A stretch of DNA of 64,000 nt from Amphiscolops sp. MND2022 (lineage: Eukaryota). The position numbers and the translations under genes are program-made. Under the pieces are notes generated by a model. It did no database searches and was not told the DNA's origin. It saw nothing but the letters and a program-made list of their open reading frames with translations. Each line of letters opens with the position of its first letter. Position 1 is the first letter of the stretch. Below, piece by piece: positions 20,052 through 44,067 of this stretch. The stretch is taken from assembly GCA_964187785.1 (NCBI GenBank), contig OZ076421.1:27838001-27902000 (forward strand). The letters are read 5' to 3'.

Positions 20052-22925
20052 GATTTCGTTGTTTTCGAAAAACACAACAATTCTTCATCTTTTGTTAGAG
20101 AAAAACTATCTGAAAAAGACATAAATCGTTGGTTTGATGTATGACAGAGCTGGATAGTTCCTTTATGCTCAAATTTTCTCTTTCGTTGTTGTTCAATACT
20201 CAGACGGTTCATCGATTGTTAGCCGAAAGCGAAGCTATGGTGCATTGAGCTTAATTTCTGTATTTGGCAGCTCTTGACACATCCGCAATGTAACTCTGAA
20301 AGATTCACGCTATAAGATCACGTAGTCGCTTGCAAAATTGAATAGCAGTTGAGAATGCATCATTTTATGTGCCAGGTGCCTTTCAACCCGAGTTTTTGTT
20401 GATCCATTCGTCTGAAACTCTCCCAAAACATCAAAATTTTTCTTAATTCCCCCAGCACTCTTTTCCCAAATTCAATGACTATGTTTTGGGCGGGAATGTT
20501 TTGCAACACTTTTTTGCTGTTTTATTGCACATTTGTTAGATATATTTATTCCTTTGTTCGCTCAGTTAAAACGGCATGGTTTTGACACAGGCAAAAGTAA
20601 AGTCAATGTTGATGAACAACTGGATGAAAACGGAAATCTTGTTACATGAACAAGTTTAAAAAACCTTCCAATACAAGAGATGGAAAGAAAACCACTGCCG
20701 ACAAGCGACAATTTCCAATTAGCAGCCCCATACATGATGTTCAAACAACTGGAAGCATTCAGTGGCGACATGGACAGAATACTAGACTATGTTGAAAAAT
20801 TTCTCAAATAAGTGAGTTGATATTCTGTTGCACTGAGACGACAACTGAATAAACTTATAAACTCTAGCAACGGCCACTCTAAAACACTTTTACCTACTGT
20901 CAAATCTAACTATCGTAGGTCAACTTTCCCCCTTATCTGCTAAAAACCCGGAAAATCTCAAGTCGGAAGCTGATAGTTCAATTGTTTTAGGACTTGAAAT
21001 GTCTGGTCAGACTATTAATTTTAGGCGTTTTTAGTCGGCGCCTTTTCCTTTAAGGAAAAAAGCCCGACTATCACAGTGGGTAGTTTTTTTCTTTTTCAGC
21101 CTACAATCTCTTTCTGAATGGTCCACTTTTTACAACTTTCATGATTCATGAATTTTAGCAAGCAAATTTATAAATAATTGCACAAAAGTTTACAACGTTG
21201 TTTTACATCATCTAAGAAATTTAACGGGACCAAAGGGTACTCCCTTACAGTATTTTCGGCTCTGTGAGACTTTTTCCGAAAAATTTCGAATTTTCCCTTT
21301 TTGATGTTTTTTGTAACCATAAGCCACTTTTTGTGTTCAAGGGGTCCCCTTTCAGGTTTTTCGGCACTGTGCGACTTTTAAATGTTCTTGAAAAACACTC
21401 TGAAGCGTATTAAGTGTATTAAGTTTAAATATTAATTGTTACTGATTGTTTACTGGCTGTTGACTGTTATTGACTGTTCTTAACTGTTGTAGTTCGTTCA
21501 GGGGGCAATGGTCCCAAGCACGCCAGAACGAACGAATCCGGGTGTGGCAGACCCTACTGACCAATTGGTGGTTGCTCTATTAATCTTTGGGGGTGTAGCA
21601 GTCGTCACCCTAGGAAGCAACGTCCTTCCTAGACCAAGCGCGGCTGGTCCCTTTGAGGATTTGGATTTTTAGAGCTCGGGTGGCCCTTACAGACGCACCG
21701 TTTTGCGTCCCAACTTTATGGGCAGAGGGTCCGCATACTGTTTGGACGCAAAATGCTGTCACCTTATATACCCGGCTTTTGTTCTTAATCTTAGCGACCA
21801 TCCGTGACAACTGATGTCGTCAAGAGAGATGATGTTGTCGGGAGCTCGGGTGACCCCTCTTCGAAGTTTTCTGCTTGGACGTTAGGATCTCAAAAAAAAT
21901 TGTTTAAAGTGTAATTGAGATCAATGATTTCCAGTATTTTTTTTGAAAGTATATAGAAACCCTGTAGCACTGGGGATTGATTCTAGCAGCGAATATTATT
22001 GTCCATTAGCAGATAACTTCGAAGGCCCATTTCAGTATGCTGTCGTTTGGGCCCTCTTCCCAGAACGGCATCGCTGCTGAAGGGCTCCAAGGATGGTCTC
22101 CCTTCGCACCGATTTGGTGCGGAGTAGGCGTTTTCGTGTTTCAAAAATGTAAAAAAAGGCCACCTCCCCTTGAAGTTTTTTTCCAGGATCGGAAAATCTT
22201 AGCCACAAAAACCCCTATTTCGCAACCCTGCTGATAGACCGAAAGATTTTACAGCTGAAATGATCCAAGGAAATAGCATTTGATCCTGAATTCCAATTGT
22301 TTGTTCAATATATTTCCTCAATATTTGGAGCTTCAACATTTATTTCTAAAAAATTTTCTATTCTACGTTTTTCAACTTTAGAATGAAAATTGTCTCTGTC
22401 AGTTTTACTTAGCATTCGCTGTGCCCAAACCTAGGTTATCATTATGGTTTTCTTTTTTATTCACAATTCAATTAATTTGTTTTTTTAATCTTACTGCTCT
22501 TTGAGTTCCTAATTATAAATCAATTGAGTATTTTGTCTTTTGAAATATGATGTAGTCAATATAGATAGAGCCATTGAGATTTTTTTTACTTAGTAGTGTT
22601 TTCGATTAATAATTCATAGTTTCGAAAGTTTCCGCCACAGCAAAAATTCGTTTGTCGTTGTCGAAGTTTTTAACTATCGAACCAGCACTTCAAATGTGTA
22701 TACGTTTACAATGTACCTTCGTGAATTCTCTATAACGTTGTTCGGACGGCTTCCTGCTGTTGTTTCTCGGCGCCCTCTTTTGACAATAATCTAAGAGTTT
22801 TTCAGAACGAATTCAAATTTTACTTGAAGCATTTTTGTTATTTTATATGCTTGTGTGCTCGCTTTTGACTTCTTGCTTACCTAACTGTCGATTTGTTAGT
22901 ATGTTGAACGTTTTCAGGGTGTAAA

Positions 22926-24034
22926 ATGTCAATCGATTCTAAACTACTGCCTCTGCTCGATAGCTCTCTGGAAGAAATTGAAACGATTCATGATATTCTT
23001 TTCTCCGCCAAATCTTCATTCTCTAGTGCTCTCATGGAAACACCTTAATCGACCAACACGAAAGATGTTCCTCGACTGTTTGATGGAGAGAAAGTCCTAC
23101 TGACAGGTATTGATCGAGCCCTTCTCCATGCCAAAAACACAGCTGCAATGATAAATGCGCAACGCAAAGATGTGCTCGCAACAGTGAAATCGGCTGAGCG
23201 GTCTCATGCTAATTATGTCACTGCATTGAAGAAATTAGCGAAGTTCAGAAACTGCAATCGCCCCACTGTGACACCGAAGTTTTCCGGATCCTCTAAAGGC
23301 GTTCAGAAAAATACTAACGTAGTCGTTCTTGTTCCAGGGACGTATTTCCTCGTAAACTCAGCTCGATCAAAACTCGAACTCCATCAATGCAAGTCTATCC
23401 TCCTGCAACCAAAAACTTGGCAGCGTCACCAAGTAGTGTTCCCAAAATTTCGATCACTTCGAGCAACCTTTCATCAGCGTTGCCTACATAGAGTTTCAAG
23501 TGTACATCTGCACAACCCGCTGGGGCCATCGAGCACGGTACCAAAGCAAATCCGATGATCACTGCAAATCCTGAAATTTGTCAGAAGTCCGGAAAGAAAT
23601 CGAGAAAAGAAAAACAGCTTTCAGCTCCGCGCGTATCATCTTCCAAAACGCTAGATATGAGCTCCCTGCCGTCTTTAACAGGAAGTTCTCTTGACGATAC
23701 AATCGCTAACTTCCCCATCGAAGACGATCAAGCTGAGCCATTTATGATTGAATCAGACAAGTCTCCTCTTTCTCCCTCGAACATGAACTCACTCAATGAA
23801 GAGATATCACTGAAGAAAGGAACACTTGATGGTATCTTCAAAGAATCACTTCCTGAAGTTGGCATTGACATGGTGGCTCCTAGTCAGCCTCGCTTTGATT
23901 CTGGCTCTCAAGTTAAAAAAGAGCCGGAAAAAAAGAGAACGAGGGCTCTAGCCTCAACAAGGAAGTCAACAAGAGCCCTCGCACTCGCTGGGGCTGTATA
24001 TAACGAGGAGTTCCCGAGTGATAGTGAAATGTGA
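22926..24034 (+). pseudogene. Helentron accessory ORF1 of unknown function (helical N-terminus, disordered C-terminus)
   Basis: ATG 22926 follows a TTTTCAG acceptor. MSIDSKLLPLLDSSLEEIETIHDILF... has an in-frame stop at ~23046, continues as track ORF 23148-23558, then shifts into 23555-24034. Confidence 0.5.
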
Positions 24035-24687
24035 TTGCGCAGCTGCAAAATGTTCATTCTTAGATCATGCTTCAATCATGTTTTTCGAGCAGGCTTGTTT
24101 CGTTTTTCATCTTTAGTTTCATTTTATCGCAATAGTCGTATGTCCTGAAGTGTGGTCGTTTAGCAGTGATATTTAGCATCGTCATCTTGAAAGTTTACTC
24201 GTAATTTTACCCTGGCAATGAGATTATGTTTTTGAAACTTTCTCATTTACTCGTAGTATTGTTCTTGTTTATACAATCGGTCTGATGCCCTAGTTTTCGT
24301 TAATTCTTTGGTATGTCTTTACCTCAAAATTTGTTCCTGAAGTTATCTCATTTTGAAAATCATTGAACGATTCGCATCAGGAAGTACCGTTATACTGGCA
24401 GGTAAATTTTACAAAAAAACTACATTGTCTTAAAAAAAATGTTTTCGTTTTTTCTTTTATCTCGTATCGATCGAATCAGCTTTTTCCGTTGTCATTCAGT
24501 TCTCATGTTTTTTTCTAGAGCTGTGTATTTCTCCAATTTGATACGTCTCTTTGATTGTTTTATTCACTCAATACAATTATATCTGCTTGCCTTTTTGAAA
24601 CTTTTGAAGCATTGAGGACGAATAAGTTTGAATACGAAGATACTCTTGAAGCTTTCATTTTGTAACGTTTTCACCTTTTTCAGGTCG

Positions 24688-25626
24688 ATGATTAATTTAC
24701 CCGAAGAAGCTCTGCGAGTACTTATCGATATTGCCAGTTCAAATCTTGATAACCAAGGTAATCATGTGGAGACACTTCCTTTTTACTCGCCATCAAAGAA
24801 GATGTTGATACTTACACAATCACAGATGTGATCCTACCAACTCAGTCAAGTAGCGGAGTGTTTGTTGAAGATCATGGCGTCAATAATCAGGATTCTGTTG
24901 TTTTTTTTGCGAAGTTTATGTAATCAAGTTCCAACAGAATTTGTGATCGGCTGGTTCCATACACATGTCCGCCGCACTCCGTTGATGCTGAGTGCTGTTG
25001 ATTGTCATACCCAGTTCCTGTACGAAACAGCAGTGTTCAAGGGAATTAAAGCTTTTGTCTTGCATCTACCATCCCAATCCCTTGAATACTATGAATTGAC
25101 TGAAACTGGTTTAAATGCTTTACGTTTGTGTACGCTGCAGCACCCCTGGAAGGCAACCATCCAGCACCCAGAATGCTTTCAATCTTCATTTTATTCCTTC
25201 TTGAAACATCTTTTGAAGAGTGGAGACACTTCTGTTACACTGATTGATGCCACGGAAAGCAGGCCTTTTTCTCAGCCACGTAGCAGTTATGAAAAGTTTT
25301 TATGTGGCAATAAGTTGCCGACAACCAAAGTCTTGGAAAGCTGTCAAGCTGACTCTCTCCATCAGACACTTGATTGCACCTTCAAATGCACTTCTTGTGG
25401 AAAATCATTCCGAGATCTCAGAACAAAACGCAAACATCTGAGCAGAACCAAATGTACTGAAACCGTCACATCTAAAGATGCACTCTCCCAGCCTGTTCCT
25501 CCTGTCGACCCCCTGAAATTTCTCGAACAGCCTTCTGTGGGTTGCTCAACAACTTTCCAGAACCAAATGAGGCTTTTCAGCATTTCTCCCGAAGCGCTTG
25601 TAAGACCTTGTACGGAACAGTTCTAG
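24688..25626 (+). pseudogene. AMSH/STAMBP-like JAMM (MPN+) metallo-deubiquitinase domain plus a C2HC-type zinc finger, two 1-bp frameshifts
   Basis: Correcting -1 at ~24778 and +1 in the T8 run at 24901-24908 gives MINLPEEALRVLIDIASSNLDNQGNHVETLAFLLAIKEDVDTYTITDVILPTQSSSGVFVEDHG...VIGWFHTHVRRTPLMLSAVDCHTQFLYE...YYELTETGLNALRLCTLQHP. This is collinear with AMSH (VETCGIL...FTITHVLIPKQ...[21 protein letters not shown]...FKLTDHGLEEISSC). Then CTSCGKSFRDLRTKRKHLSRTKC. Confidence 0.85.
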
Positions 25627-25926
25627 CGGAGAGAAAGCGCTTGAAAAAGCAAATGTAAGACAGCGATAGAAATAAAAAAGACATTCGACAACCACGATCT
25701 ATCAAAATGATGACCAGTAATAAAAATAAAACTCAATATGAAAAAAAATCGGATGAGGTTGAAAAGAATCTATGTTGTTGCGTTGAAAGATAAGTTGAAG
25801 AGGAAGTACCAAGATAGACTCAAAGAACAATTGAGATTGAAATACCTAATCTATCGCAGGGAAAGTCTGAGAGTGGAATACTAGGAAACCTTGCGGAGTA
25901 AATGGAAAGAAAAGTATCAGATGAAT

Positions 25927-26322
25927 CTGAAGGAACCGCTCACCGATAAGTATCGCCACAGATTGAAGGATGCGCTCGCCGAAAAGTATCGCCACAGATT
26001 GAAGGAAGCGCTCACTGATAAGTATCGCCGCAGATTGAAGGAAGCGCTCGCCGATAAGTATCGCCACAGATTGAAGGAAGCGCTCGCCGATAAATATCGC
26101 CACAGATTGAAGGAGCCGCTTCGTGTCAAATACCAGACGAAATTGAGGGAACCTTTGAAACTGAAATACCGCACTTCATTGGAGAAACCTTTGAAAAGAA
26201 AATACCAGGCTTCATTGAAGGAGCCTCTCCGGATCAAGAACCAAAATTGTCTGAAAGAACCTCTTCGCATTAAGTACCAAGAGTCAATCAAAGAACGTTC
26301 GCAGCTAAAATATCGAATCAAG
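25927..26322 (+). repeat. Coding 36-bp tandem repeat (12-aa unit LKEALADKYRHR), 5 near-identical plus ~6 diverged units, N-terminal to Rep
   Basis: Visible in track ORF 25891-26478; no spacers, in frame. Confidence 0.9.
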
Positions 26323-26329
26323 AAGTCCA

Positions 26330-28881
26330 CGAAGACGTTTGATGAACTTTTGAATGAATTCCGGCGGAGTGTGTGTTTGGGCCTAACCTTTGAATGTATT
26401 TGCTGCGAACGAGTACTTTTTGAGAATGGTGTTGTTAAGATATCCGAAAACGCTTTTCCCGACTTGACAAACAGTTGATTGCGAGAAGCATCAAATCAGA
26501 ACTTCTTTCTAGTCATAATTATTTGTGCCACTGCTGCCATCGATGTTTACCAAAGGGTGACTTACCCAGCATGTCTGCTCAGAATAGTCTTACTATCGAG
26601 TCACTTCCTGAAGAACTCAAACTTTTGGATTTTGAAATGCAACTGATTGCTAAAGACCTTTTATTTTCGAAAATTTTCAGTTTGCCGGAGTCACGCATGC
26701 CAGCGGTTAAAGACAAAGTTATAAATGTGCCTCTAACGCATACTGATCTTGAAAATACAACAAAGATTCTCCCACGTAATTTGGACCATTCGCTACTGAT
26801 CAATGTGCAATTCAAGCGATGCAAAGATTTCAAAAACGCTCATTCAGAAGCGCTGGTTCTTCCACACATGTTAATCAAGGCGCTAGCGTGGCTGCAATCT
26901 AGAGGAAATCCTTTCTACAATGAAGTTGTCCTGAATCAGAAGTTTCGTCTGGACGAAACAGCCCTTTTTTCAACGGACGAGCAGCCGCAAGATGACCAGG
27001 AAGCAGCTCAAACGAAGAAAGAAGATAACTTAGACACATACCTTATTCCTCAGAACTCGGCTGCTCATGTGATTTCCATTTATGGTGTTGTCCGCGAAGT
27101 CGTCTCGGAAACTATTGTTGTCGCTCCAGGAAAAAAAAACAAATTTCCGACGAACTGCTTGGCTAATGTGGACTTCGAAGCAAAGTCCTTTCCTTGTTTT
27201 TTCCCGTCCGGAAAGTTTACATTGAGTGCTACACGCGATGAGAGAATTAGTTCCCAGCAATACTTCAGTCAGAGGATAATGAACAAGAACTCTCGTTTCT
27301 CCGAAGACAGTAGCTATTTGTTTGCTGCTCAGCAGCGAGTAGAAAGAGAATAACTGGAACGATAATGCGATATATTTTTTCGCAAAGGAAAAACAGAGCG
27401 CTTGGATAATGACACAGTCAAAGTAAGTCAAGATGACATACAAACAGTCTTTCAGCGAATTCGTGGAACTAGTCAATACTGGAGAGTCGCTCGTATTAAG
27501 TTAATCGCAAAAGTTAAGCAACCAACTCGGTCCCTTTCAGTACTTTTTCACGCTTTCATGTGCCGAAATGAGATGGCCCGAGGTTTTTACGACAGTTCTG
27601 AAATCACAAGGACATACAATCAGCCTTGAAGCCAAGTTTGACCCAAGTGGTAATGATTCTCGAGTGCTTGTCGATGACGTGCCTTTGAAAATTTTTCGGG
27701 AATCCCAACCCATCGAAAGAGTTACTGTCCTCCGGCACTTCGTCGTTCATGTTACAAGGATATTCAACAATAGAGTTCGAACCTTCATTCAGAAAGTAGT
27801 AATGTCAAAGTACGAAGGCTGCTTGCCAGTTTTGTTTTATTCATATCGTGTTGAGATGCAGTTACGAGGAAAGGCCCATTTTCATGGTTGCTGGTGGTTG
27901 GATGAAGCGTTCTTGCGCGAATGTAGCTTTTTGAGTGACGAACAGTGAATCGCCAATCTCATTGAAAACTTCATCACTTGCGCATTGCCACTTGAGTCCG
28001 ATCCCTTGCGTCAAATTGTTCAAGAATTTCAAACCCATCATCATACGAAATCTTGTATGAAAAAATCTTTCTCATGCAGGATCGGTTTCTCTAAGTTTCC
28101 TTCGGAAGTGACTTTAATAGCTCAGCAACCGGAGACGAAAGATGAAAATTCCATCGAACAGAGTCGTCTGGTACTACAAAAAGCAAAAAGTTTAATACAT
28201 AGTCCTAATCTGCCTCTCACTTTCGAAGATTTCTACGAACAGCTGAACGTCTCTCGCGAAGTGTATCATTCCGCGCTCTCTATATTTTCGAGAGGCAAAG
28301 TCGTCATCATCAAACGGAACCTCAATGAATTGTATATCAACAATTATAATCCGAAGTGGCTGACGGCGTGGAACGGGAACATGGATCTACAGTTTTGTTG
28401 CGACCCTTATGCTGTGGTTACGTATACTTGTGACTAAAACTCGAAGAATGAGACAGGCCTCACCGATGTTCTCAAGCAAACTGTCAAACAACAACTGGAC
28501 CTGCGTCAGTCAGAATACGAAATGCTCAAAATTCTGAAGAGTGTGTACCTTACTCATCGGCAGATTGGAGCTTGCGAGGCGACATATAGACTTTTGAAGA
28601 GTTTGCATTTAAAAGACTCTAACATAACTACAGTCTTCATAACGACTGGTTTTCCGGAGAATAGGTGTCGGTTCTTGAAGTGGACAGAGGAACAGGATAT
28701 TCAGAATGCGCCGGTAAATATCGCAGGACGAGAAGGGTCCTACTTGTGGACCATGACCATACATGAGAAGTACAGCAAACGGCCTTCTGCCCTCGATGAC
28801 ATTTGTTTAGCAGAATTTGTGATTAACTATAGTTCTATGCCCTCAAATAGTTCCAAACCAAAACGAATTGTCGCAAACTAG
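26330..28881 (+). pseudogene. Helitron Rep (HUH rolling-circle initiator) region with upstream Cys-rich domain, multiple stops and frameshifts
   Basis: FECICCER and LCHCCHRC...KVINVP; EMQLRGKAHFHGCWWL (HUH at 27877-27885); QTHHHTKSC; NNYNPKWLTAWNGNMDLQFCCDPY; HRQIGACEATYRLL. Confidence 0.9.
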
Positions 28882-31510
28882 AGATTGTTTGCCAGTTTTT
28901 GTTCTTTTGAACGATAACGCTGGTGTGATGCGTTTGCGAGAGATTCCGTGTGTTTTGCGATTACATGAGTCCAAAAGGAAGATGGAAAACTACGAGTTTG
29001 TTTACTCTGAGTGCCTATTGTGCTTTTCTTGGAGAATTGAAGATGAACTGCACCGACATTCTTCCGAGGATTCAATCAAATTATACCATGACAATCGAGA
29101 AGTGTTCCTCAGAAACAAGTGCAAAATTTTCCCCTTCACTCAAGAAAATGAAATAACTGAAGAACGCCTCACATCTGTTGACATAACTGCTCACCGAGCT
29201 GTCCACATTAGTGACACTCTAGATCCCCAAAGTGAGCAAATGAATGAGGACGAATTAGATGAGCTTCTAAACCCTGAATTCTGTAATAGGCATTCTGGAT
29301 CCTTCTCCGCTGATGTTACTCCTGGATCACGTACTACTCTGCCGACGATAAAGAGTTTGCAACCGACGGAGATTCGACAAAGTATTCGGTCGTTACATGA
29401 AGAGCAGCGGAAAGTTTTTGATGTGGTTGCACATTTCGTTAATCAGTTTCTGCGTGGTGGCAACCCAACGCCTCCACTTTTTATTGTCCAAGGAGAAGCG
29501 GGCACTGGAAAGACCAAACTCATCAATTCAATTATGAACTATGTGTCATCTATTTCAGCTGGCGGTGGTTCGCAACTTGACAAACCAAAAGCACTGGTCG
29601 TTGCTCCGACCGGAATTGCAGCTTCTCTCGTGAATGGGAATACCTTACATTCAACGTTTCAACTCAATTTCGGCGATGATCTCACCAACCTTGCTGATAG
29701 TTCACTCGACAAATTGAGGTCCACATTGGAATAACTGGTCATATTGATTGTTGATGAAATTAGTATGGTACGTTCGGACCTCTTCTACCAACTGCACGAG
29801 AGGCTTCAAATAGTGAAACAAAACGATCGCCTTTTCGGGGGTATTGCCGTGCTGCTTTTTGGCGACCTCTTGCAGCTCAAGCCTGTTCGCGGTCGTTTCA
29901 TATTTCAACAACCACGCGCTCAAACATATGCCGAATACTATGACTTCTGCAATCTCTGGCTTCAGTTTCAGTCTGTCGTTCTTCAAGCTAATCATCGGTT
30001 AGATATCAACATTTCCCTGGTTTATACATGAGTTGTGCTTTTTCTTTTACCTGTACTGTGTTTTAGGCAGAAAGGTGATTGCAAATTGATAGAAATTCTG
30101 AAACGTGTAAGCACTGCTTCGCTAACTGAAGATGTCCATATTGTCCTATCTTCTCTACAAGTACCTGAAAACGTCGTCTCCCTACCACCAGACGCTACTC
30201 GCATTTTATTCACGAATGCCGAAGTGGACTCTTACAATAATGAGAAGCTGAATAGTTTACCTGGACAAATGTTTGTTTCTAAGTCTGTAGTTACCTCTCC
30301 AGTCGGATGTCGACCAAAAGTAGCGCATGGGAAAACCGATGACACGGCTTTTAGTGACTTGGTCAGTTTGCAAGTGGGATCTCGAGTAATGTTGGTTTAT
30401 AATGTGGATGTCAAAGTTGGCCTAACCAACGGCCAGTTGGGAACAATTGTGGGCAATATTTCCTCTGATTTATGTCTAATTGATTGCGTGCTTGTTTCTT
30501 TCGACGACAAGCACATCGGTACCTTCCTTGCCAACCAGTACACGCAATTTCAGAAGACATACCCGGGGGCCGTTCCGATTTTCAAAGCTTTCGTATCCTA
30601 CCAGCTTGGAGGAAAAAGTCAACACGGTGCTCGCTCCCATTTGCTACAACTCCCCCTCCGCCTCGCTTGGGCTCTAATTTGCCATAAAGTGCAAGGTCAA
30701 ACTTTTCCTTCTGGACAAAAGGTAATAATCAAATGGGATCGAAGTCTACAACCTGGAATGGCATACGTCATGCTTAGCCGGGCCAAAAGTATGTCGGACA
30801 TATCAATAACAGGCGACTTTTCTCCACGACAATTAAGATGTAATGCTGAGGCCAAGTTAATGTGCGATTTTCGGCAGCTTCCCGAAAGGTCCGCAACGTC
30901 TACCGCGAACATTTTCTTGAACAGTCCTAAGCTGAGAAATTGTTGCCTAAATATCCAGTCGTTGAATGCCAATATAGAAGATCTCAAGGCAGATTATCTC
31001 ATCAATTCTTGTGACTTTCTTCTGCTGTCTGAAACTTGGCTAGAGACGAGTTATCCAGTTCTTGACTTGCAGCCTAGAGTTTTGACATCCAGACATCTGA
31101 AAGAAGGCAGAGGGCGAGGTTTAAGTAAATACTCAACTCATACAAACTGCGAAATACAACTTCATAACTCAATGATCAAAATTCTTGTGAAGGCTGCCAG
31201 CTTCTCAATTATTGGAGTGTATAGAAACCATCAATGTCCTTTTTCGCTTTTTATGGATAACTTGCTAAACCGTATCACTGATGAAACTGCCATTATCATA
31301 GGAGATTTCAACTCTCCGGGCCCAACTCGCATTGAAGGCTTCCTTGAAAAGCTCGGCTTCAGGCAGCTTGTCGCTACGCCAACGCATTGTGCAGGCAACA
31401 AACTCGATCTTTGTTTCGTGAGATACATTGACGTCTCACTCTTTGTTCATCCTTGCTACTATTTCCATCACGATTGTATCTGTGTAACTGTCAATAGCAT
31501 CAAGTCCTAA
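28868..31510 (+). pseudogene. PIF1-family SF1B helicase fused to an APE/EEP endonuclease (Helentron C-terminal half)
   Basis: Walker A GEAGTGKT (29492-29515), APTGIAA, IVDEISMV, FGGIAVLLFGDLLQLKPV, HKVQGQT, AYVMLSRA. A GT-AG intron at 29998-30066 restores NHRQKGD. EEP motifs LNIQSL, LLLSETW, IIGDFN, LDLCF, FHHD. Confidence 0.92.
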
Positions 31511-31717
31511 TCGTTTTTTTTTCTGTTATGTCAAGAATAGTAAGTATTTGATTTAGATGAAGTTTTTGTTTTAACTGTCCAGTTTTTGAATTCAAAATTA
31601 ATTTCTTCAGCTATTTTTTTGTTTTGTTTAGAAACTCGGTAAAGCATCTGTTGGACGGGGAGGTTAACAGTCATATCAAATATTCAAGTTCTTAGGCGAG
31701 ACGTCAACATGGATTCT

Positions 31718-31820
31718 AGTTCGGATGTAACGTTTTCAAAGTTCGGATGTAACGTTTTCAAAGCTCCGATGTAATGTTTTCAAAGTTCCGATATAACGTT
31801 TTCAAAGTTCAGATATAATT
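31718..31820 (+). repeat. 22-bp tandem array (AGTTCGGATGTAACGTTTTCAA x ~4.5) in the Helentron 3' region
   Basis: Units at 31718, 31740, 31762, 31784 and a partial one at 31806. A reverse-complement array lies at ~32424-32578. Confidence 0.9.
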
Positions 31821-32288
31821 TTTTCATTTCTCGTATAATATCAATTTTTGCCCCAAAATGTCACATAATTTGCTTCCAAAGTATTGCTTAGGGGTCAGAG
31901 TTTCAGTATTATAAGACTTTGGATTTTTGAGCCTTAGATATGGCGCCGACTTGGGCCGATCCCGGCTTGTTGGTACTAAAAAACTCTAGTAATGAAACCT
32001 GATGTAATGGCAATAACAGAGATTCTTCGAATGACAGAAATTAACCCAATGGAAAAACTTCACTTCAATGGACATCAGTCAATTGTTTCAAATCCACGTA
32101 AGAAATATAAACATCGATCGGGTGGTGTTGCCTCTAATACCAAAGTTGGTATGCAACTTTAGCCAATGAAAACAATCGAGGTTGAGTTCCAGCCTATTAA
32201 GGTGGAATTCAACCACGACGTATTCATACTTTTCATGTAATTTATTCAGACAAAAATTTTGGGCTGTCACGTTTCTTGAGAAAACAGG

Positions 32289-32711
32289 AACAAGCCGGGA
32301 ACGACCCAAGTCGTCGCCGTACCTAAGGCTCAACAAGTTATATGAAATTTTGGGGGAAAAATCGATAACGTTATACGATGAGTGAAAACGGTGAATACGG
32401 ACTTTGAAGAAGTTGCATCAGAGTTTTGGAAACGTTACTTCAGAATTTTGAAAACGTTACATCCGAACGTTGAAATCGTTACATCCACACTTTAAAACGT
32501 TATATTCTAACACTTTGAAAACAATATATTCGAAGTTTGAAAACGGTACACCGAGCTTTGAAACGTTATACCCAAACTGAGATCCGTGTTATTCCCTCGA
32601 CTAAAAAATGAACAAAAAAAAACAAAACGTGGACCTATTCAAGGTAAACTGAGAACAAACTACCCACTGTTATACCTGGGCCCTTTTCTTAGGAAAAGTG
32701 CCGACTCAAAA
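32289..32711 (-). mobile_element. Complete ~420-bp non-autonomous Helentron derivative (HINE)
   Basis: Minus strand starts TTTTGAGTCGGCACTTTTCCTAAGAAAA...ACAGTGGGTAGTTT (like 21028-21085), carries ~7 units of the 22-bp array, and ends GGCGACGACTTGGGTCGTTCCCGGCTTGTT (like 31942-31971). Confidence 0.8.
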
Positions 32712-34675
32712 CAAATCAGGATCATAATGAACCTGAGAGATGATAATGCAAGGATCTTTTTTCCTAGTCGATCAAAAATTAATGTCATTCTAACAACAGC
32801 TTGAATTCACCTTTCAAAAGTTTTCGCTTATTCCATTTCGACGGCAACTTTTCTTGTTTCTTCAAAAGTACTTGTTCGTGAAAAACACTCATGAGTCGAG
32901 AGTTTCAAAAGTACTTTTGAAGGAACAAATAAAGTTTCCGTCGAAATGGGATATGCAATAAGTTTTAAAATGTTGCTCCCCAATGATAGAACCTCAATTA
33001 GCAACATTATTCATGAACTGGGATGAAAAAGTCATTTTCCCGATTGCTTCGAAACAACAACAATATTATTACATTGTTGAGGTGACTGCAAGGACACCGG
33101 AAATTTCAGGTCAAAAGGATGTTCATGTTCTTTGAGAAGACTTTTCGAAAAATCATCACTCATACGATTGCTGTATTTTTAGCCAACACGAAATCTTTTG
33201 CATAGAACTCAGTTTGGGTTTAGATCTAAAAACAGCTTCGCAACTGTAGTCGAATACATGAGACCAGCTATAGATAAAAAGCAGTGAACGAACTTTGTTT
33301 CATTGATGTGCAGAAAGCTTCCGATACTCTTAATTATGAAGTGTTTTCGTTTGGAAGTGAAGCTTACGGTTACCGAGGGACAGTAACTTTGAGGGACAGT
33401 TATCAAAAAATTCCTATCAAATTTCTAAAGGATAGGAGTCAATTCGTATGTAACAATATGCAAGCATCATCAAAAGGACAGATTATTGCGAATATCAAAC
33501 GACGATCTCTGTTCGGGTCATTTCTTTTTGGAAACCCAAATGATTTATAAGCTGTTATCAAAGCAAGTCAAGTTGCCATGTTTTCTGATGACACAAGTTA
33601 CCCCAAGAACGAAAAAAAAAGCGAAGTTTCATTTTATGTAGTTGTTGAAATTGTGTCAAGGGTAATAGGTGACAAGTTATTGTAATGGTCGCAAAATGTG
33701 AAGTTCTTTCATTTGGCAAGGGGTTTTTTGGGAATATATATTTTTAAAAAAGTCATTGAAATACTAGGAAAAATAACTAGTTGGATATTTGATAATCGCT
33801 GACCACCTATAGTATGTTCGTGTGCTTGACCGTTTCGTTAACCAAATCTATCACAACCTATGGTTTATTGATTTATGGAGCTAAAATGATTTATAGGCTG
33901 ATCATTTTTGAAATTTCTCAAAGCAGAAGTCGTGCAGGGATTGTTTCATACAAAATTTCGATTACCTCAGATACATTTGGTTCTAAAGCAAACTCTAGAC
34001 TGTCTTTGAAAGGTATATAGAATTGTTCACAGCAGGTCGGAACAGATTAGAAGTGAGTATCCCCTAGAAATCTTCACTTTTCCTTCACATGCAAAGATTC
34101 ATATTTTATAAAATCGTGGTCGTTGAAGGAACATTTCCTTTCTGGGAAATATGTGGACAGTGGTCAGACAAAATGAAATCTCATTTTTTATGACGTTTGT
34201 TTGTTGAATTTGGATTTGATCTTTTTTGATTTCGACAGTTTTTGAAAACGTTTGGAAGATGACTAATACGGAAACCAGGTCACTTCTTGACAAAATTGAT
34301 GTTGTATGTGCTTAACAACAGAGTAGTTTTATCGTTGATTTTTTCTAATTTTTTTCATCAATCCATATAATGGTTTCTCAAGGGCTTGACGAGCAGTCTC
34401 TTCGCCTGTACTGGCTGGACGTTTGCTATCATAGTTACATGCATTTGGAAGTTCTGTTTGTATTTTGTATATCGATTTTACTGTTCTGATCTGGTTGGAT
34501 AAGCGTTTCTCCATTCAGACCCTTTTGCAGCACCAACTTTACACAATCTCAGACTGTTCCGTTGTCTGTCTATTTTGCGTAGTGGAAACCCTCGTAATCG
34601 AGAGTTCAGCATTTCGCTGCGAATAAAGTTTCAGCGTTTTAGAACACAATTGGACAATAATTTCACTGTCAGCCA

Positions 34676-37933: not shown

Positions 37934-40900
37934 CTATTCGTTTATTTCCAAAGCACACAATCTAATAGCTGGCAAAATAAGTTCTCCCCGTGGTGTCCGA
38001 ACTTTGTATTGTCTATACTGACTATCTTTAGAGAACTCGACTTCTTCACCATTAGATACAGGAGCTACGATCCGTCCCAAAGGCCAAAGACCTCGTGGTG
38101 TGAATTCCTGCAAAATCCATACAATTGAACCTGGTTGAAGAGGTTTGGATAAAGCTGTCCACTTTTGTCGGGGAATTAACGATGGATAAAACTCTTTTTG
38201 GAGACGATTCCAAAGGTAGTCAGCCAGTTGCTGAGCAAATTTCCATTTTTTAGAAATTGTTGCTGGAGATGGGTATGGCTGACTTAGAGGAACGTTGCTG
38301 TAGGCTCTTCCCAGCAAAAAGTGGTTTGGGGTCAAAGGCTCAACATCTCCAGAGTCGGATGAAACCGCAGTGAGAGGGCGATTATTCATGAAGTGTTCTA
38401 CTTCACAAAGAAGGGTGTTGAAGGTGTCGTCAGTTAAAGCGTTGTTGCCCAAGATGGCATAGAACGCGTCTTTACAGGAACGAATGAGACGTTCCCAGAC
38501 GCCTCCGAAATGAGGCGCCTGCGGAGGGTTGAAAATCCAGCGGATTTCTCGTTTTCCGAAAAATTCTTGCAAGGTTGGTTGACTGAAGATTTGGAGTAAT
38601 TCTTTTTCCGAGGCGGTGAAGTTGGTGCCGTTGTCAGAGATCAGCAAATGCGGTTGACCTCGGCGGGAAAAGAAGCGGCATAGAGCTTTCATGCACGCGT
38701 CTACGGACAAGTCGGTACACATTTCAAGGTGAACTGCGCGAGTGGTGAGGCAAGTCAAGATTAGACCATAGCGTTTATTGTAACTGTGGGAAGTAGTCTT
38801 CGATGCGAATGGTCCAAAAACGTCGAGTCCGGTTTGCTGAAACGGAAATGGTTGTTCGATTGGAAAACGATAAATCGGCAGGTCGGACATTTCAGGAAAC
38901 TCGGCGAACGCAGATTGACGGCGGCAATCGAAACAGCGGCGAATGATTTTCTTTATAACCGATGCGGAGGACAAGATCCAATACTCAAGCTGAAGTATAT
39001 GTTGTGTTTGCTTCAGGCGGGTATGACCATTGCTGCAATGGACGAAGTCGATGAACAATTGGATTATGCGATTGTGTCCATCTAAGATCATGGGGTGTTT
39101 CAAGCAGTAGTCAAATGGCGACTTACGTAAACGACCTTCGGCGCGAAGGCAATTGTCGGCGTCGAGGAAGGGCTTCAAGTTTCGTAGGCGGCTTTTAGGG
39201 GCGATAATTTTTTGCTGGACAAAGATAGAATTTCGTTATGGAAACTCTCCTTTTGCGAGGCTAGGAGAAGAAACATTTTTGCATCAGACATTTCATCAGC
39301 GGACGGAAACGGAACGGCGTGACGGGGCGAGAGTGACCGGAACGACGACGAGTGAAACTTGCTCAGCGACGGCGTCATGTTGCGACAGTTAGTAACGTTA
39401 TTAGGCGTTTGGGAGCGAAAGCGGAGGCTCCTAAATTTTTTGATAGCTCGAAGAACAAAGGCAGTGACACGAACTAGACGTTTCCATGAAGAGAAACGAC
39501 TGACTTCAAGAGTGTGGGAAGTGTCCTGTTGAACGATAGAGCTTGATGATGGTGAAGGAGTCAAATGGGCCTGCGAGCATGTGTTTTTAGAACATGTTGA
39601 AGCAATGCTAACGTGTTCCATTGCACATTGCGGTGTTGACACAGTGGCTACTACTGTGGCGTCTGTGCCAACTAAATCTTCGTCGGCTACTTCTGTGGCT
39701 GTAGATATTTCTGCTGCTTCGTCTTCGTCTTCTGCTTCTTCGGCATCTTCTGCTGTTAGGACAGCAGCGGCGTCGGAATTGTGTGTGGCATCTTCTGCGT
39801 TACGGAGACCGTCGGTGTGTGGGGCTTGAACATTTGTGGCTACGTCTGCGGCTTTGTCTTTGGTGGCTCCGTGTGCGACTTCTTCTTCTGTGGCTACGTC
39901 TGTGGCATCGTCGTTGGCTACGTCTGTGGCATCTTCGTTGGCTACGGCTGTGGCATCATCCTTGGCTACGTCTGTGGCATCGTCCTTGGCCACGTCTGTG
40001 GCATCGTCCTTGGCTACGTCTGAGGCATCGTCCTTGGCTACGTCTGTGGCATCATCCTTGGCTACATCTGTGGCATGGTCCTTGGCTACGTCTGTGGCAT
40101 CATCTTTGGCTACATCTGTGGCGTCGTCGTTGGCGTGAAAACAATTCTTCTGTGAGGTTCTTCGGGTACACCTCATCGTTGTCAATTGCGTGTGGACGGG
40201 ATTTGATGGCCATTGCGAAACTGGTTGTTTCAAGAACTCAGGTCCTTGGAACCAGCGAGTGTTACTATGAAAGTCGCGGAACGGAATTCCGCGTGTACCA
40301 TCATCGGCGGGATTCGTTTCTCCAGGACAATGATTCCATTGGTGTGATTGTGTATTGGTGAGTATTTCTGCTACCCTGTTGGCAACAAAAATTTGTTGAC
40401 GTTGATGGGATCCGTAAATCCACTGCAAGACAGTAGTGCTATCTGTCCAGAGATGGATAGAGTCGAAGGAGAGTCGCTGTTCGTGTTGAACAAAGTGTGC
40501 GAGGCGGGAGCCCAAAAGAGCTGCCTGCAGTTCGAGCTTTGTTATGGTATGTTGCTGCAAGGGGGCAACTCGGGCCTTACCAAGCGCGAAACAAACTTCG
40601 GGCGGTGACGACGGCGAACAACGGTAAACGAAATACGCGACGGCAGCGAGTGCGGAGTAGGAAGCGTCAGTGAACACATGGAGCGATATGGCGTACGGTT
40701 TATCACGGAAGTACTGTCGCGGAATTGTGACGGAAGACAGTTCCGGCAATTCAGCAACTGTGACGAAGAATTCTGGCAAGACGGACGGAGTTATTGGGTC
40801 GTCCCATTTCAAGCCTTTTCGCCAAATAGTCTGCTGAATTATGCGAAAACGAATTGTAACGGGAGCGGCGATTCCGAGAGGGTCGAACACGGAGGACGTG

Positions 40901-43900: not shown

Positions 43901-44067
43901 ACATCAGCGAGAATTGTTTTCAATTCCGTTTTTATTGGTTCAATATTGAAGTTCGAATTTTCTTCATCGATGGCTCTATATATCCTGCTAAAGAGGCGAG
44001 TGGCTTTTGCGATATGAAAGTTACGCTGTGCAAGCGAAGTTTTTGGCTGGTTGACTTTGGAAGGCAT
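37934..44067 (-). pseudogene. BEL/Pao gag-pro-RT-RNaseH-integrase polyprotein with one nonsense codon and one frameshift
   Basis: Pao-type gag with three Cys/His knuckles, protease FLDSGST, RT FYMDD, RNase H VFTDAS...KLELQAA, integrase GLDVFGP/ISDNGTNF/GVWERL. In-frame TAA at 41307-41305 (FGA*CSP) and a -1 shift in the A-run at ~39208-39213. Confidence 0.93.
39891..40134 (-). repeat. Coding 24-bp tandem repeat x10 (DDATDVAK) between RNase H and integrase
   Basis: Plus-strand unit TGGCTACGTCTGTGGCATCGTCCT; ten consecutive units counted. Confidence 0.95.

What the first reader, a model, noticed from the sequence alone, without database searches (positions are those of the whole stretch)
24688..31510. 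Helentron encoding an AMSH-like JAMM deubiquitinase upstream of Rep-Hel-EN
Seen: after fixing two 1-bp indels, a full MPN+ domain with the catalytic Glu (VETL, 24769), HTH (24958-24966) and SAVD. The His after the Asp, the Cys in LRLCTL and later His residues may form the AMSH second zinc site. It is followed on the same strand by a zinc finger, a 12-aa charged repeat, Rep, PIF1 and APE, all within the subTIR-bounded element. Established: AMSH/STAMBP are K63-linkage-specific zinc metallo-DUBs, and some animal Helitrons/Helentrons carry an OTU cysteine-protease DUB at the N-terminal side of Rep-Hel. I know of no report of a JAMM there. Inference: convergent recruitment of a mechanistically unrelated DUB to the same position would imply that rolling-circle transposons benefit from removing ubiquitin, for example K63 chains at their own DNA breaks or on the transposase. 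The spacing is HxH-x8-S versus x7 in AMSH, and this copy is decayed.
Basis: partly seen in the sequence, partly recalled or inferred. Interest (0 to 1): 0.85.

Follow-up and report, generated by a model that had tools for sequence, protein, structure and literature searches.

The report
Helentron transposon with AMSH-like metallo-deubiquitinase
A decayed rolling-circle transposon (Helentron) in this window begins its polyprotein with an AMSH-like zinc deubiquitinase domain, and this domain marks a whole, apparently undescribed Helentron clade, adding a metalloprotease to the cysteine-protease deubiquitinases these transposons were already known to carry.

Summary
Window 24688-25257 encodes a complete MPN+/JAMM domain broken by exactly two 1-bp indels. 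It is followed on the same strand by a C2HC finger, a 12-aa repeat, DUF6570, Rep, PIF1 helicase and AP endonuclease.

- **Element:** the copy spans 21028-31971, wider than the finding, and is decayed.
- **Not a one-off capture:** divergent copies in the same genome and uninterrupted 2152- and 2165-aa ORFs in marine metagenomes carry the same N-terminal JAMM.
- **Selection:** omega is about 0.07-0.15. Catalytic residues are kept in at least 93% (mostly 96-99%) of about 130 cluster representatives.
- **Phylogeny:** all JAMM carriers form one RepHel clade that holds no OTU, VTD or USP carrier.
- **Closest relatives:** AMSH, AMSH-LP and Sst2, by sequence (E 4e-7) and by fold (E 5e-14).
- **Differences from AMSH:** the transposon type has HxH-x8-S spacing and a probable His-Cys-His-Cys second zinc site, and it lacks a MIT domain.
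- **Prior art:** I found no report of JAMM in Helitrons or Helentrons. The idea that Helentrons recruit different deubiquitinase classes is already published (PMC9741609).
- **Not tested:** enzyme activity and K63 specificity.

The scan's first readers noted the same kind of element twice elsewhere in this genome (s1-151694, s1-151803).

The parts
21028..31971 (+). Whole decayed autonomous Helentron copy (about 10.9 kb)
   Evidence: Homology to copies L007 and L008 runs from about 21027 to 31818 and on to the shared 3' terminal sequence. The 5'-end sequence GTTTTTAGTCGGCGCC... is shared by all copies. L007 6428-6482 shows a 3'-end|5'-end head-to-tail junction that fixes both termini.
21033..21042 (+). 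5' subterminal inverted repeat AGTCGGCGCC, inside a terminal hairpin (about 21032-21070)
   Evidence: It is the reverse complement of GGCGCCGACT at 31942-31951. The hairpin folds at -12.2 kcal/mol, z -3.3 against shuffles.
21443..22232 (+). Highly conserved, structured non-coding block of unknown role
   Evidence: Mean column identity is 85% across subfamilies whose coding DNA is about 66% identical. It has no ORF over 66 aa and no Rfam match. Long hairpins are predicted, with almost no covariation.
23148..24034 (+). Upstream conserved ORF0 (two pieces, frameshifted), function unknown
   Evidence: It aligns with ORFs at the same relative position in L007, L008 and L001. It has no Pfam family.
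24677..24683 (+). Invariant TTTTCAG, a splice-acceptor-like motif just upstream of the JAMM ATG
   Evidence: It is invariant in all five copies, while the sequence further upstream is not alignable between subfamilies. That it is spliced is an inference.
24688..25257 (+). AMSH-like JAMM/MPN+ domain in three frame pieces (24688-24777, 24778-24905, 24907-25257). Key codons: Glu 24769, His-x-His 24958-24966, Ser 24991, Asp 25000, His 25006, Cys 25129, His 25165, Cys 25174.
25387..25455 (+). Single C2HC zinc finger (C-x2-C-x12-H-x5-C)
   Evidence: It sits in the same position, with the same spacing pattern, in all JAMM-Helentron lineages checked. Only weak, sub-threshold C2H2-type Pfam hits were found.
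25738..26330 (+). Charged 12-aa (36-bp) repeat. The core array is 25928-26114; degenerate copies lie on both sides.
   Evidence: TRF gives period 36, 5.2 copies, 91% matches, and the repeat finder families D1 and D3 agree. Similar K-rich KY(Q/R) repeats occur in P0159.
26553..26942 (+). DUF6570, the marker domain of the Helentron/Helitron2 (HLE2) group
   Evidence: Pfam PF20209, E 9e-13, 49.3 bits against a cut-off of 24.3. Its use as an HLE2 marker is from PMC11417382.
27279..28830 (+). Rep (HUH endonuclease) region, with the HFH motif at 27877-27885, interrupted by in-frame stops
   Evidence: Pfam Helitron_like_N, E 7.5e-5. It is collinear by tblastn with P0014 residues 781-1246 at 42% identity.
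28874..30900 (+). PIF1-type helicase, with in-frame stops at 29732 and 30029
   Evidence: Pfam PIF1 at E 2.7e-10 and 2.7e-11, and Pif1_2B_dom at E 3e-6. The stops are seen.
30950..31510 (+). [quoted passage not shown]
   Evidence: Pfam Exo_endo_phos is weak in the window (E 0.011). It is E 3.7e-4 in P0014 and is on record as an unmarked Pfam hit in L004. It is collinear with P0014 up to residue 2151.
31718..31826 (+). 22-bp tandem repeat array (5 copies) in the 3' untranslated part of the element
   Evidence: The array is also present in L007 and L008.
31923..31971 (+). 3' terminal sequence, with the subterminal inverted repeat GGCGCCGACT (31942-31951), ending ...CCCGGCTTGTT
   Evidence: The same sequence ends the homology between L007 and L008. 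It abuts a 5' end in L007.
32289..32712 (-). Neighbouring 424-bp non-autonomous derivative in inverted orientation (5' end, then 22-bp repeats, then 3' end)
   Evidence: Its reverse complement matches 21027-21089, 31718-31872 and 31927-31971 of the main copy in order. Inverted repeats I1, I6 and I11 agree.

Best explanation
Window 21028-31971 is a dead copy of an autonomous Helentron (Helitron2/HLE2-group rolling-circle transposon).

Its polyprotein runs in this order: AMSH-like JAMM zinc isopeptidase, C2HC zinc finger, lysine-rich repeat, DUF6570, HUH Rep, PIF1 helicase, AP endonuclease.

The JAMM domain is an integral, vertically inherited module of one Helentron clade. It was acquired once, long ago, from an AMSH-like ancestor, and purifying selection has kept it.

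Most likely (inferred, not shown) it is an active metallo-deubiquitinase. It would do the job that OTU, VTD or USP cysteine proteases do in other Helentron clades: removing ubiquitin, plausibly K63-linked chains, from the transposase or from host proteins at the nicked or single-stranded DNA intermediates. That would protect transposition from ubiquitin-dependent degradation or damage signalling.

In this particular copy the domain is inactive, because two frameshifts break it.
For: **Domain identity**
- Pfam JAB is above threshold in the intact relative P0003, at 28.3 bits.
- PDB phmmer: AMSH-LP is best at E 3.8e-7 over residues 3-188, against RPN11 at 2e-3 and CSN5 at 0.29.
- The AlphaFold2 model of P0003:1-203 has pLDDT 95 and pTM 0.90. 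The top 24 Foldseek PDB hits are all AMSH, AMSH-LP or Sst2 (E about 5e-14, TM 0.7-0.8); the next is Prp8 at 3e-10.

**It belongs to the transposon**
- P0014 (2152 aa) and P0156 (2165 aa) are uninterrupted ORFs from JAMM through to the endonuclease region. Pfam finds Exo_endo_phos in P0014 at E 3.7e-4.
- P0156 is identical in two independent metagenome assemblies, one of them a TARA record.
- Copies L001, L002, L007 and L008 of the same genome, and L004 and L010, are all collinear.
- All 7 JGI loci with downstream DNA are collinear.
- The window is collinear with P0014.

**Selection**
- P0014 versus P0156: the MPN domain has the lowest dN of any domain (0.134) and omega about 0.11.
- Within-genome subfamilies: pN 0.21-0.26, pS 0.68-0.74, omega 0.07-0.15.

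**Catalytic residues across about 130 cluster representatives**
- Glu 51/55, His 120/122, His 117/122, Ser 118/122, Asp 118/122.

**One clade**
- In the JAMM tree, cellular AMSH splits from the transposon type at 99/97 support.
- In the RepHel trees, all JAMM carriers, the window's lineage included, form one clade (SH-aLRT 99 and 96). That clade holds no OTU, VTD or USP carrier and no row with at least 600 residues ahead of Rep and no deubiquitinase domain. The remaining rows in it are N-terminally short models that cannot be scored.
- The window's lineage is sister to the rest in both trees.

**Functional precedent**
- Helentron VTD domains are active deubiquitinases that cleave K48, K63 and K11 chains (PMC9741609).
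Against: - No enzymology exists for any member. Deubiquitinase activity and linkage preference are inferred from homology alone.
- The loop that carries the proximal-ubiquitin contacts in AMSH-LP is one residue longer here (x8 versus x7). Ins-2 is longer, with a different fourth zinc ligand. Specificity could therefore differ from AMSH.
- The structure was predicted for a 54%-identical relative, not for the broken window copy.
- dS is saturated, so omega values are rough upper-bound-style estimates.
- The JAMM tree is unrooted, so 'single acquisition' rests on congruence with the RepHel tree.
- The RepHel trees were quick searches with SH-aLRT support only, and six rows inside the JAMM clade are N-terminally truncated models that cannot be scored.
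- Host organisms of the window and of the intact copies were not identified.
Confidence: 0.8

Rival explanations
1. The JAMM domain is catalytically active but does not act on ubiquitin. It might cleave NEDD8 or another ubiquitin-like modifier, as CSN5 does, or process the transposon's own polyprotein.
For: The x8 loop and the altered Ins-2 and zinc site differ from K63-specific AMSH. Helentron VTD domains also cleave NEDD8 (PMC9741609). The domain sits at the extreme N-terminus of a very long polyprotein.
Against: Its closest relatives by sequence and fold are the ubiquitin-specific AMSH, AMSH-LP and Sst2, well ahead of CSN5 (E 0.29). It occupies the position that OTU, VTD and USP ubiquitin proteases hold in sister Helentron clades. 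No JAMM protease is known to me to process a polyprotein (my own knowledge).
Confidence: 0.13
2. The domain is a non-catalytic MPN scaffold, a pseudo-enzyme used for protein binding, as in Prp8 or RPN8.
For: Many eukaryotic MPN domains are inactive (my own knowledge). A few family members have lost the Glu and a His: P0062 and P0063 read Q for the Glu and HTR or HST for H-x-H.
Against: The metal ligands and the catalytic Glu and Ser are kept in 93-99% of about 130 divergent representatives. That level of retention is not expected of a scaffold. Omega is about 0.1.
Confidence: 0.05
3. This is a one-off or recent capture of a fragment of the host's STAMBP gene by this copy or family, with no role in the transposon.
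For: Helitrons are well known for capturing host gene fragments (PMC11417382).
Against: The domain is present in at least three subfamilies of this genome, 54-80% identical to the window's copy in protein, and in unrelated samples. The transposon type is separated from cellular AMSH at 99/97 support and is only about 25-30% identical to it. It has a family-wide x8 signature that cellular AMSH lacks. It is under purifying selection, and it co-diverges with RepHel.
Confidence: 0.02

Closest known systems
AMSH (STAMBP), AMSH-LP (STAMBPL1) and S. pombe Sst2: K63-specific JAMM deubiquitinases
   Same: They are the best sequence match (E 3.8e-7, aligned over the whole catalytic domain) and the best fold match (top 24 PDB hits). 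Shared features are the catalytic Glu, H-x-H, Ser and Asp, the His after the Asp, the Ins-2 Cys and one Ins-2 His. The alignment keeps Thr96 opposite AMSH-LP Thr353, and Met99 (Phe in most members) opposite Phe355. That these two residues contact the proximal ubiquitin is from my own knowledge.
   Different: - The spacing is HxH-x8-S, not x7, with Val instead of Pro after the second His.
- The fourth ligand of the second zinc site is probably a Cys at +3, not a His at -2.
- Ins-1 and Ins-2 are longer, with a conserved V[DE]D.GI motif.
- There is no MIT domain or STAM-binding region: the domain starts at the N-terminus of the ORF.
- It forms a separate side of the tree (99/97).
- It is encoded by a transposon, fused to Rep-Hel-EN.
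Helentrons carrying VTD (Herpes_teg_N) and/or OTU cysteine deubiquitinases (Erven et al. 2022, PMC9741609)
   Same: The element class is the same (Rep, PIF1, AP endonuclease, DUF6570), and the accessory deubiquitinase sits in the same position, N-terminal to Rep in the same ORF. The published idea that Helentrons benefit from deubiquitination supplied by different DUB classes applies directly.
   Different: Catalysis is mechanistically unrelated: a zinc metalloprotease rather than a papain-like thiol protease. The RepHel clade is different. No OTU, VTD or USP Pfam domain is found in the JAMM carriers. VTD activity has been shown biochemically; JAMM activity has not.
HLE2 elements with UCH/USP or Ulp1 (Peptidase_C48) domains (HELIANO survey, PMC11417382)
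   Same: These are further ubiquitin or ubiquitin-like proteases stably included upstream of RepHel in HLE2. USP carriers lie in the sister clade of the JAMM clade.
   Different: JAB/MPN appears nowhere in the main text of that survey or of its preprint. Its supplementary table was not available to me. Pfam JAB misses many transposon-type JAMMs at E 1e-3, including P0014, P0013 and P0021, which would explain the omission.

Membership tests
JAMM/MPN+ metalloproteases | The catalytic residues: Glu, H-x-H, Ser and Asp | tested here: met
   All are present in the window at codons 24769, 24958-24966, 24991 and 25000. They are conserved in 93-98% of about 130 family representatives.
JAMM/MPN+ metalloproteases | Canonical spacing H-x-H-x7-S-x2-D | tested here: not met
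   The spacing is x8 in the window and in essentially all transposon-type members. The cellular AMSH hits in the same search have x7.
JAMM/MPN+ metalloproteases | A match to the Pfam JAB (PF01398) profile above the gathering score | tested here: inconclusive
   The window's largest piece scores 21.1 bits against a cut-off of 22.5. The intact relative P0003 scores 28.3. Of 40 aligned members, 32 match at E 0.01 or better, but P0014, P0013 and P0021 are missed at E 1e-3.
JAMM/MPN+ metalloproteases | The MPN fold | tested here: met
   The AlphaFold2 model of relative P0003 has pLDDT 95. Foldseek finds 270 PDB matches at E 0.001 or better; all 50 listed are MPN-domain proteins (AMSH, AMSH-LP, Sst2, then Prp8). 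The window's own copy is broken and was not modelled.
JAMM/MPN+ metalloproteases | Zinc-dependent isopeptidase activity | not testable with these tools
   This needs biochemistry.
AMSH/STAMBP subfamily | Closer to AMSH than to the other MPN families (RPN11, CSN5, BRCC36, Prp8) | tested here: met
   PDB phmmer gives AMSH-LP 3.8e-7, against RPN11 2e-3 and CSN5 0.29. Foldseek gives AMSH-type 5e-14, against Prp8 3e-10. The only cellular hits in the 1.84-billion-protein search have the AMSH-type HTHP...SS.D motif.
AMSH/STAMBP subfamily | A second, structural zinc site formed by His, Cys, His and His in Ins-2 | tested here: inconclusive
   The His after the Asp (119/122), the Cys (109/110) and one His (101/106) are conserved. 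The other His position is not (mostly Asn). A Cys three residues later is conserved (103/106), which suggests His-Cys-His-Cys. The geometry could not be measured, because no model coordinates were available.
AMSH/STAMBP subfamily | N-terminal MIT domain and STAM/ESCRT-binding regions | tested here: not met
   The JAMM domain starts within 5 residues of the ORF start in the window, P0003, P0013 and P0159, and after about 55 unassigned residues in P0014. No MIT Pfam hit was found.
AMSH/STAMBP subfamily | Groups with cellular AMSH orthologues in a tree | tested here: not met
   The 11 cellular AMSH rows are one side of a branch with 99/97 support, and all transposon-type rows are on the other side. 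The tree is unrooted.
AMSH/STAMBP subfamily | K63-linkage specificity | not testable with these tools
   This needs a di-ubiquitin panel assay.
Helentron (HLE2 rolling-circle transposons) | HUH Rep fused to a PIF1-type helicase | tested here: met
   Helitron_like_N, the HFH motif at 27877, and PIF1 are all present. The region is collinear with the intact P0014.
Helentron (HLE2 rolling-circle transposons) | C-terminal AP-type endonuclease | tested here: met
   Exo_endo_phos is weak in the window (E 0.011). It is E 3.7e-4 in P0014 and an unmarked Pfam hit in L004. The tblastn alignment reaches P0014 residue 2151.
Helentron (HLE2 rolling-circle transposons) | The DUF6570 marker domain upstream of Rep | tested here: met
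   E 9e-13. Its marker status is from PMC11417382.
Helentron (HLE2 rolling-circle transposons) | Subterminal inverted repeats and terminal hairpins | tested here: met
   AGTCGGCGCC at 21033 pairs with GGCGCCGACT at 31942. The 5' hairpin has z -3.3; the 3' hairpin is weak, z -1.1. L007 holds a head-to-tail junction.
Helentron (HLE2 rolling-circle transposons) | Insertion between T and T | tested here: inconclusive
   Both ends lie in or next to T-runs, so the exact junction cannot be placed. No empty site was found.
OTU-, VTD- or USP-bearing Helentrons | Carries an OTU, Herpes_teg_N or UCH domain | tested here: not met
   None of these is found in the window's ORFs or in the JAMM carriers. They occur only outside the JAMM RepHel clade.

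The most novel reading that the evidence does not exclude
The JAMM-Helentron clade defines a new AMSH-like metallo-deubiquitinase subfamily, marked by x8 spacing, a His-Cys-His-Cys structural zinc site and an adjacent C2HC finger. On this reading its K63-directed activity is required for rolling-circle transposition: it erases K63-ubiquitin damage signalling, or ubiquitin on the transposase, at the element's own nicked or single-stranded DNA intermediates. Four or five unrelated deubiquitinase folds would then have converged on one job in Helentrons.
Probability: 0.3. Interest if true: 0.8.

Novelty: new variant of a known kind. Interest (0 to 1): 0.62.

Why it matters
- **A new enzyme class in these transposons.** Helentrons were known to carry cysteine-protease deubiquitinases: OTU, VTD and USP. 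A whole clade that carries a zinc metalloprotease in the same position strengthens the case that deubiquitination itself is what these transposons need, rather than any particular fold.
- **A defined enzyme family to test.** The intact natural ORFs (P0014, P0156) could be used to ask which ubiquitin signal restrains rolling-circle transposition.
- **Why routine annotation misses it.** Pfam JAB scores many members at or below threshold.
- **A protein-evolution example.** It shows an AMSH-like fold with a remodelled zinc site and substrate loop.

Tried and rejected
- **ESM Atlas feature search.** It returned only generic JAB clusters, mostly archaeal, and said nothing about taxa or relatives.
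- **AlphaFold DB cluster search.** It found only AMSH-type proteins at 24% identity or less, with organism names masked. No transposon-type cluster appeared.
- **Scans with a transposon-type JAMM alignment.** IMG/VR viral contigs and 185,579 prokaryotic species genomes gave no relatives. A first attempt with the broader alignment failed for lack of a conserved stretch.
- **Identifying the host organism.** The sources carry no names, and contig records give only accession numbers. The taxon of the window and of the intact copies remains unknown. One intact copy comes from a TARA metagenome record.
- **HELIANO supplementary domain table.** It is not held, so I could check only the main text and the preprint for JAB.
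The inverted repeat 21055-21089 / 32654-32688 at first looked like the element's terminal repeat. It is in fact the 5' end of a separate, inverted non-autonomous copy.
- **Zinc-site geometry.** It could not be measured, because model coordinates are not exposed.
- **The zinc finger.** Pfam scans gave only sub-threshold C2H2-like hits, and no ubiquitin-binding finger family.
- **The conserved 5' block.** Rfam found nothing.

Full report
**1. The observation**

The region was read directly and translated in three frames. An ORF starts at ATG 24688. It reads MINLPEEAL...GNHVETL and then loses frame. The next frame continues SFLLAIKEDV...LPTQSSSGVFVEDHGVNNQDS. After a second shift the first frame resumes with ...FVIGWFHTHVRRTPLMLSAVDCHTQFLYE...LRLCTLQHPWKATIQHPECF....

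A DNA alignment with four related copies shows that the window has exactly two lesions in the domain. One is a 1-bp deletion after 24777. The other is an extra T in the run at about 24898-24906.

The three pieces tile intact relatives without gaps. Against an HMM built from relatives, they are the only matches in the whole window: E 5.7e-6, 5.5e-11 and 1.8e-30, in order along the profile.

Downstream on the same strand:
- Pfam finds DUF6570 (E 9e-13), Helitron_like_N, PIF1 (two pieces, about 1e-10 each), Pif1_2B and a weak Exo_endo_phos.
- Tandem Repeats Finder finds the 36-bp (12-aa) repeat.

The copy is decayed, with several frameshifts and in-frame stops.

**2. What the domain is**

A word-indexed search with the largest piece found five proteins, all from one ENA assembly. 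P0001 is 99% identical and may be the window's own locus in that assembly. The others are 54-80% identical, and P0003 is annotated JAB.

- **Pfam.** P0003 (338 aa, intact) scores 28.3 bits on Pfam JAB, above the 22.5 cut-off.
- **Solved structures, by sequence.** The best match to P0003 is AMSH-LP (E 3.8e-7), aligned across the whole catalytic domain. STAMBP and Sst2 follow. RPN11 (2e-3) and CSN5 (0.29) are far behind.
- **Fold.** An AlphaFold2 model of P0003:1-203, built on a 40-sequence alignment, is confident (pLDDT 95, pTM 0.90). Its top 24 Foldseek hits in the PDB are all AMSH, AMSH-LP or Sst2 catalytic domains (E about 5e-14, TM 0.7-0.8). Prp8 MPN domains follow at 3e-10.

**3. A large transposon-type family**

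An exhaustive HMMER search of 1.84 billion cluster representatives returned 144 hits. About 130 of them carry the signature H[ST]HV-x7-S-x2-D, which is H-x-H-x8-S. About 25 are cellular AMSH-type proteins with HTHP-x6-S-x2-D, which is x7, and these have the domain at the C-terminus of proteins of about 420 aa.

Conservation across the family is high:

| Residue (P0003 numbering) | Conserved |
|---|---|
| Glu28 | 51/55 |
| His90 | 120/122 |
| His92 | 117/122 |
| Ser101 | 118/122 |
| Asp104 | 118/122 |
| His106 | 119/122 |
| Cys147 | 109/110 |
| His159 | 101/106 |
| Cys162 | 103/106 |
| His153 | not conserved (mostly Asn) |

In cellular AMSH the equivalents of His106, Cys147 and His159 are conserved, but Cys162 is not. 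The second zinc site is therefore probably His-Cys-His-Cys here, against His-Cys-His-His in AMSH-LP (the AMSH-LP ligands are from my own knowledge). A few members (P0062, P0063) have lost the Glu and a His and look inactivated.

A maximum-likelihood tree puts the 11 cellular AMSH rows on one side of a branch, at 99/97 support, and all transposon-type rows on the other.

**4. The domain belongs to the Helentron**

- **Same genome.** L001 and L002 are copies whose JAMM regions are 54% and 68% identical in protein to the window. Both have the JAMM ORF followed, on the same strand, by DUF6570, Helitron_like_N, PIF1 and (in L001) Exo_endo_phos. L007 and L008 show the same order.
- **Intact ORFs elsewhere.**
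  - P0014 is a single uninterrupted 2152-aa ORF. It holds JAMM (61-257), DUF6570, Helitron_like_N, PIF1, Pif1_2B and Exo_endo_phos.
  - P0156 (2165 aa) is 75% identical to P0014 in the JAMM region. It occurs identically in two independent assemblies, one of them a TARA record.
- **Other long members.** Eleven transposon-type proteins of 461 aa or more carry DUF6570 in the same protein. In ten of them it lies downstream of the JAMM; in P0012 a DUF6570 fragment lies ahead of it. L004 and L010 show RepHel downstream.
- **Unbiased sample.** A pattern scan of JGI metagenome contigs gave 11 loci. All 7 with at least 1 kb downstream are collinear with P0014. Two of them have ORFs of 1869 and 1935 aa running from JAMM into the helicase.
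- **The window itself.** It is collinear with P0014 from residue 61 to 2151.
- **Shared architecture.** In all lineages checked, a C2HC finger (C-x2-C-x12-13-H-x5-6-C) follows the JAMM by about 20-30 residues. In P0014 and P0159, whose linkers were read, lysine-rich repeats follow it.

**5. Selection and history**

- **P0014 versus P0156.**
  - The JAMM domain has the lowest dN of any domain (0.134). DUF6570 is 0.152, Rep 0.158, PIF1 0.209 and the endonuclease 0.214.
  - Omega for the JAMM domain is about 0.11.
- **Within-genome subfamilies.** pN is 0.21-0.26 against pS 0.68-0.74, giving omega 0.07-0.15. dS is saturated, so these values are rough, but neutrality is excluded.
- **Which Helentrons carry it.**
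  - A search with the RepHel region of P0014 returned 143 full-length Helentron proteins, 120 of them listed.
  - Scanning those with the transposon-JAMM HMM found 7 carriers, all with the domain at the N-terminus. None is annotated JAB in the precomputed Pfam column.
- **RepHel trees.**
  - All JAMM carriers, plus the six JAMM loci including the window, form one clade (SH-aLRT 99 and 96).
  - That clade holds no OTU, VTD or USP carrier, and no protein with N-terminal room but no DUB domain.
  - The sister clade holds OTU, USP and VTD carriers.
- **Congruence.** The window's lineage is sister to the rest in both the JAMM tree and the RepHel tree. This fits one old acquisition followed by co-divergence.

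**6. Element anatomy**

Homology to L007 and L008 starts at about 21027, which is 3.6 kb upstream of the JAMM ATG.

- **5' end.** All copies share the sequence GTTTTTAGTCGGCGCC..., with a strong hairpin (z -3.3).
- **3' end.** The sequence is ...GGCGCCGACTTGGGCCGATCCCGGCTTGTT, at 31971. AGTCGGCGCC and GGCGCCGACT are the subterminal inverted repeats.
- **Junction.** L007 holds a 3'-end|5'-end head-to-tail junction, which fixes both termini.
- **The long inverted repeat.** The repeat reaching to 32713 belongs to a separate 424-bp non-autonomous derivative in opposite orientation.
- **Upstream of the JAMM.**
  - There is a conserved ORF0 of unknown function.
  - There is a 750-bp non-coding block that is more conserved than the coding sequence.
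  - An invariant TTTTCAG lies just before the ATG. This suggests an intron, which is an inference.

**7. How it probably works**

*Shown:*
- an AMSH-like MPN+ fold with all catalytic and metal ligands;
- fusion to Rep-Hel-EN in one ORF;
- purifying selection;
- restriction to one Helentron clade.

*Inferred:*
- The domain is a zinc isopeptidase that removes ubiquitin. K63 chains are plausible, given the AMSH kinship and the alignment of Thr96 and Met/Phe99 with AMSH-LP Thr353 and Phe355 (their role as contacts is from my own knowledge).
- It would act on the transposase or on host factors at transposition intermediates, as the counterpart of the OTU, VTD or USP modules of sister clades.

The functional precedent is that zebrafish Helentron VTD domains cleave K48, K63 and K11 chains (PMC9741609). 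The altered loop and Ins-2 mean that specificity could differ from AMSH.

**8. Comparison with what is known, and novelty**

- **Already published.**
  - PMC9741609 describes VTD and OTU domains in Helentrons. [quoted passage not shown]
  - HELIANO (PMC11417382) lists OTU, UCH, Peptidase_C48 and Herpes_teg_N among 20 stably included domains. JAB/MPN appears nowhere in its main text or preprint. Its supplementary table was not available.
- **Not found.** Full-text searches pairing Helitron or Helentron with JAMM, AMSH, JAB or MPN domain found nothing relevant.
- **Why it may have been missed.** Pfam JAB misses P0014, P0013 and P0021 at E 1e-3, which probably explains the gap.
- **Verdict.** The concept is known. 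The enzyme class, and the clade that carries it, appear to be new: a new variant of a known kind.

**9. Limits**

- There is no biochemistry for any member.
- The host taxa are unknown.
- The structure was modelled on a relative, not on the broken window copy.
- The trees are unrooted or were quick searches.
- The literature library lacks most subscription journals and Repbase Reports.
- The scan's first readers noted the same kind of element twice elsewhere in this genome. I did not examine those loci.

Noticed in passing
window 32289-32712 (- strand): A 424-bp non-autonomous derivative of the same Helentron family lies 317 bp downstream in inverted orientation. It consists of a 5' end, the 22-bp repeat array and a 3' end. 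Together with the main copy it produces the long inverted repeats seen around 31718-32497, and also the pair 21055-21089 / 32654-32688.
   Followed up: yes
window 21443-22232: A non-coding block of about 750 bp, near the element's 5' end, is conserved at 85% across subfamilies whose coding DNA is only about 66% identical. It includes a 41-nt invariant run at 21592-21632. It has no ORF and no Rfam family. Several long hairpins are predicted, with almost no covariation. Its role is unknown; it could be a cis-acting signal, a promoter or a non-coding RNA.
   Followed up: partly
window 23148-24034: A conserved upstream ORF0 (two pieces, frameshifted here; 330 aa in L007:8235-9227) has no Pfam family. 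It sits at the same relative position in L001, L007 and L008. It may be a separate gene or an upstream exon.
   Followed up: partly
window 24677-24683: TTTTCAG, 4-6 nt before the JAMM ATG, is invariant in all five copies, although the flanking upstream sequence is not alignable between subfamilies. This looks like a conserved splice acceptor.
   Followed up: partly
L007:5613-6520: There are three successive copies of the Helentron 5' end, and a 3'-end|5'-end head-to-tail junction at about 6466/6467. This is the kind of tandem arrangement expected from rolling-circle read-through.
   Followed up: partly
L009:388-2196 (P0025): A 602-aa ORF has a transposon-type JAMM (57% identical to P0014 residues 1-335) fused to a C2H2 zinc-finger array. 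No RepHel homology is found in the 3.1 kb downstream. Near-identical proteins occur in several samples. It may be a domesticated gene or a non-autonomous element.
   Followed up: partly
P0066 (1673 aa): This protein has at least 12 tandem partial copies of the N-terminal half of the transposon-type JAMM domain (query residues about 27-95) and no Pfam family.
   Followed up: no
P0062, P0063: These transposon-type MPN domains have the catalytic Glu replaced by Gln and the H-x-H motif degraded to HTR or HST. They are probably inactivated (MPN-minus) offshoots.
   Followed up: no
P0014, P0013, P0021: Pfam JAB does not detect the JAMM domain of these proteins at E 1e-3, and the precomputed Pfam lists of all seven full-length JAMM carriers lack PF01398. 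Pfam-based surveys of transposon accessory domains would therefore miss this family.
   Followed up: yes
window 37934-44067 (- strand): Three large ORFs (414, 676 and 920 aa) lie in a stretch with raised G+C (0.44-0.50) and strong positive GC skew. This is probably another mobile element. I did not examine it.
   Followed up: no
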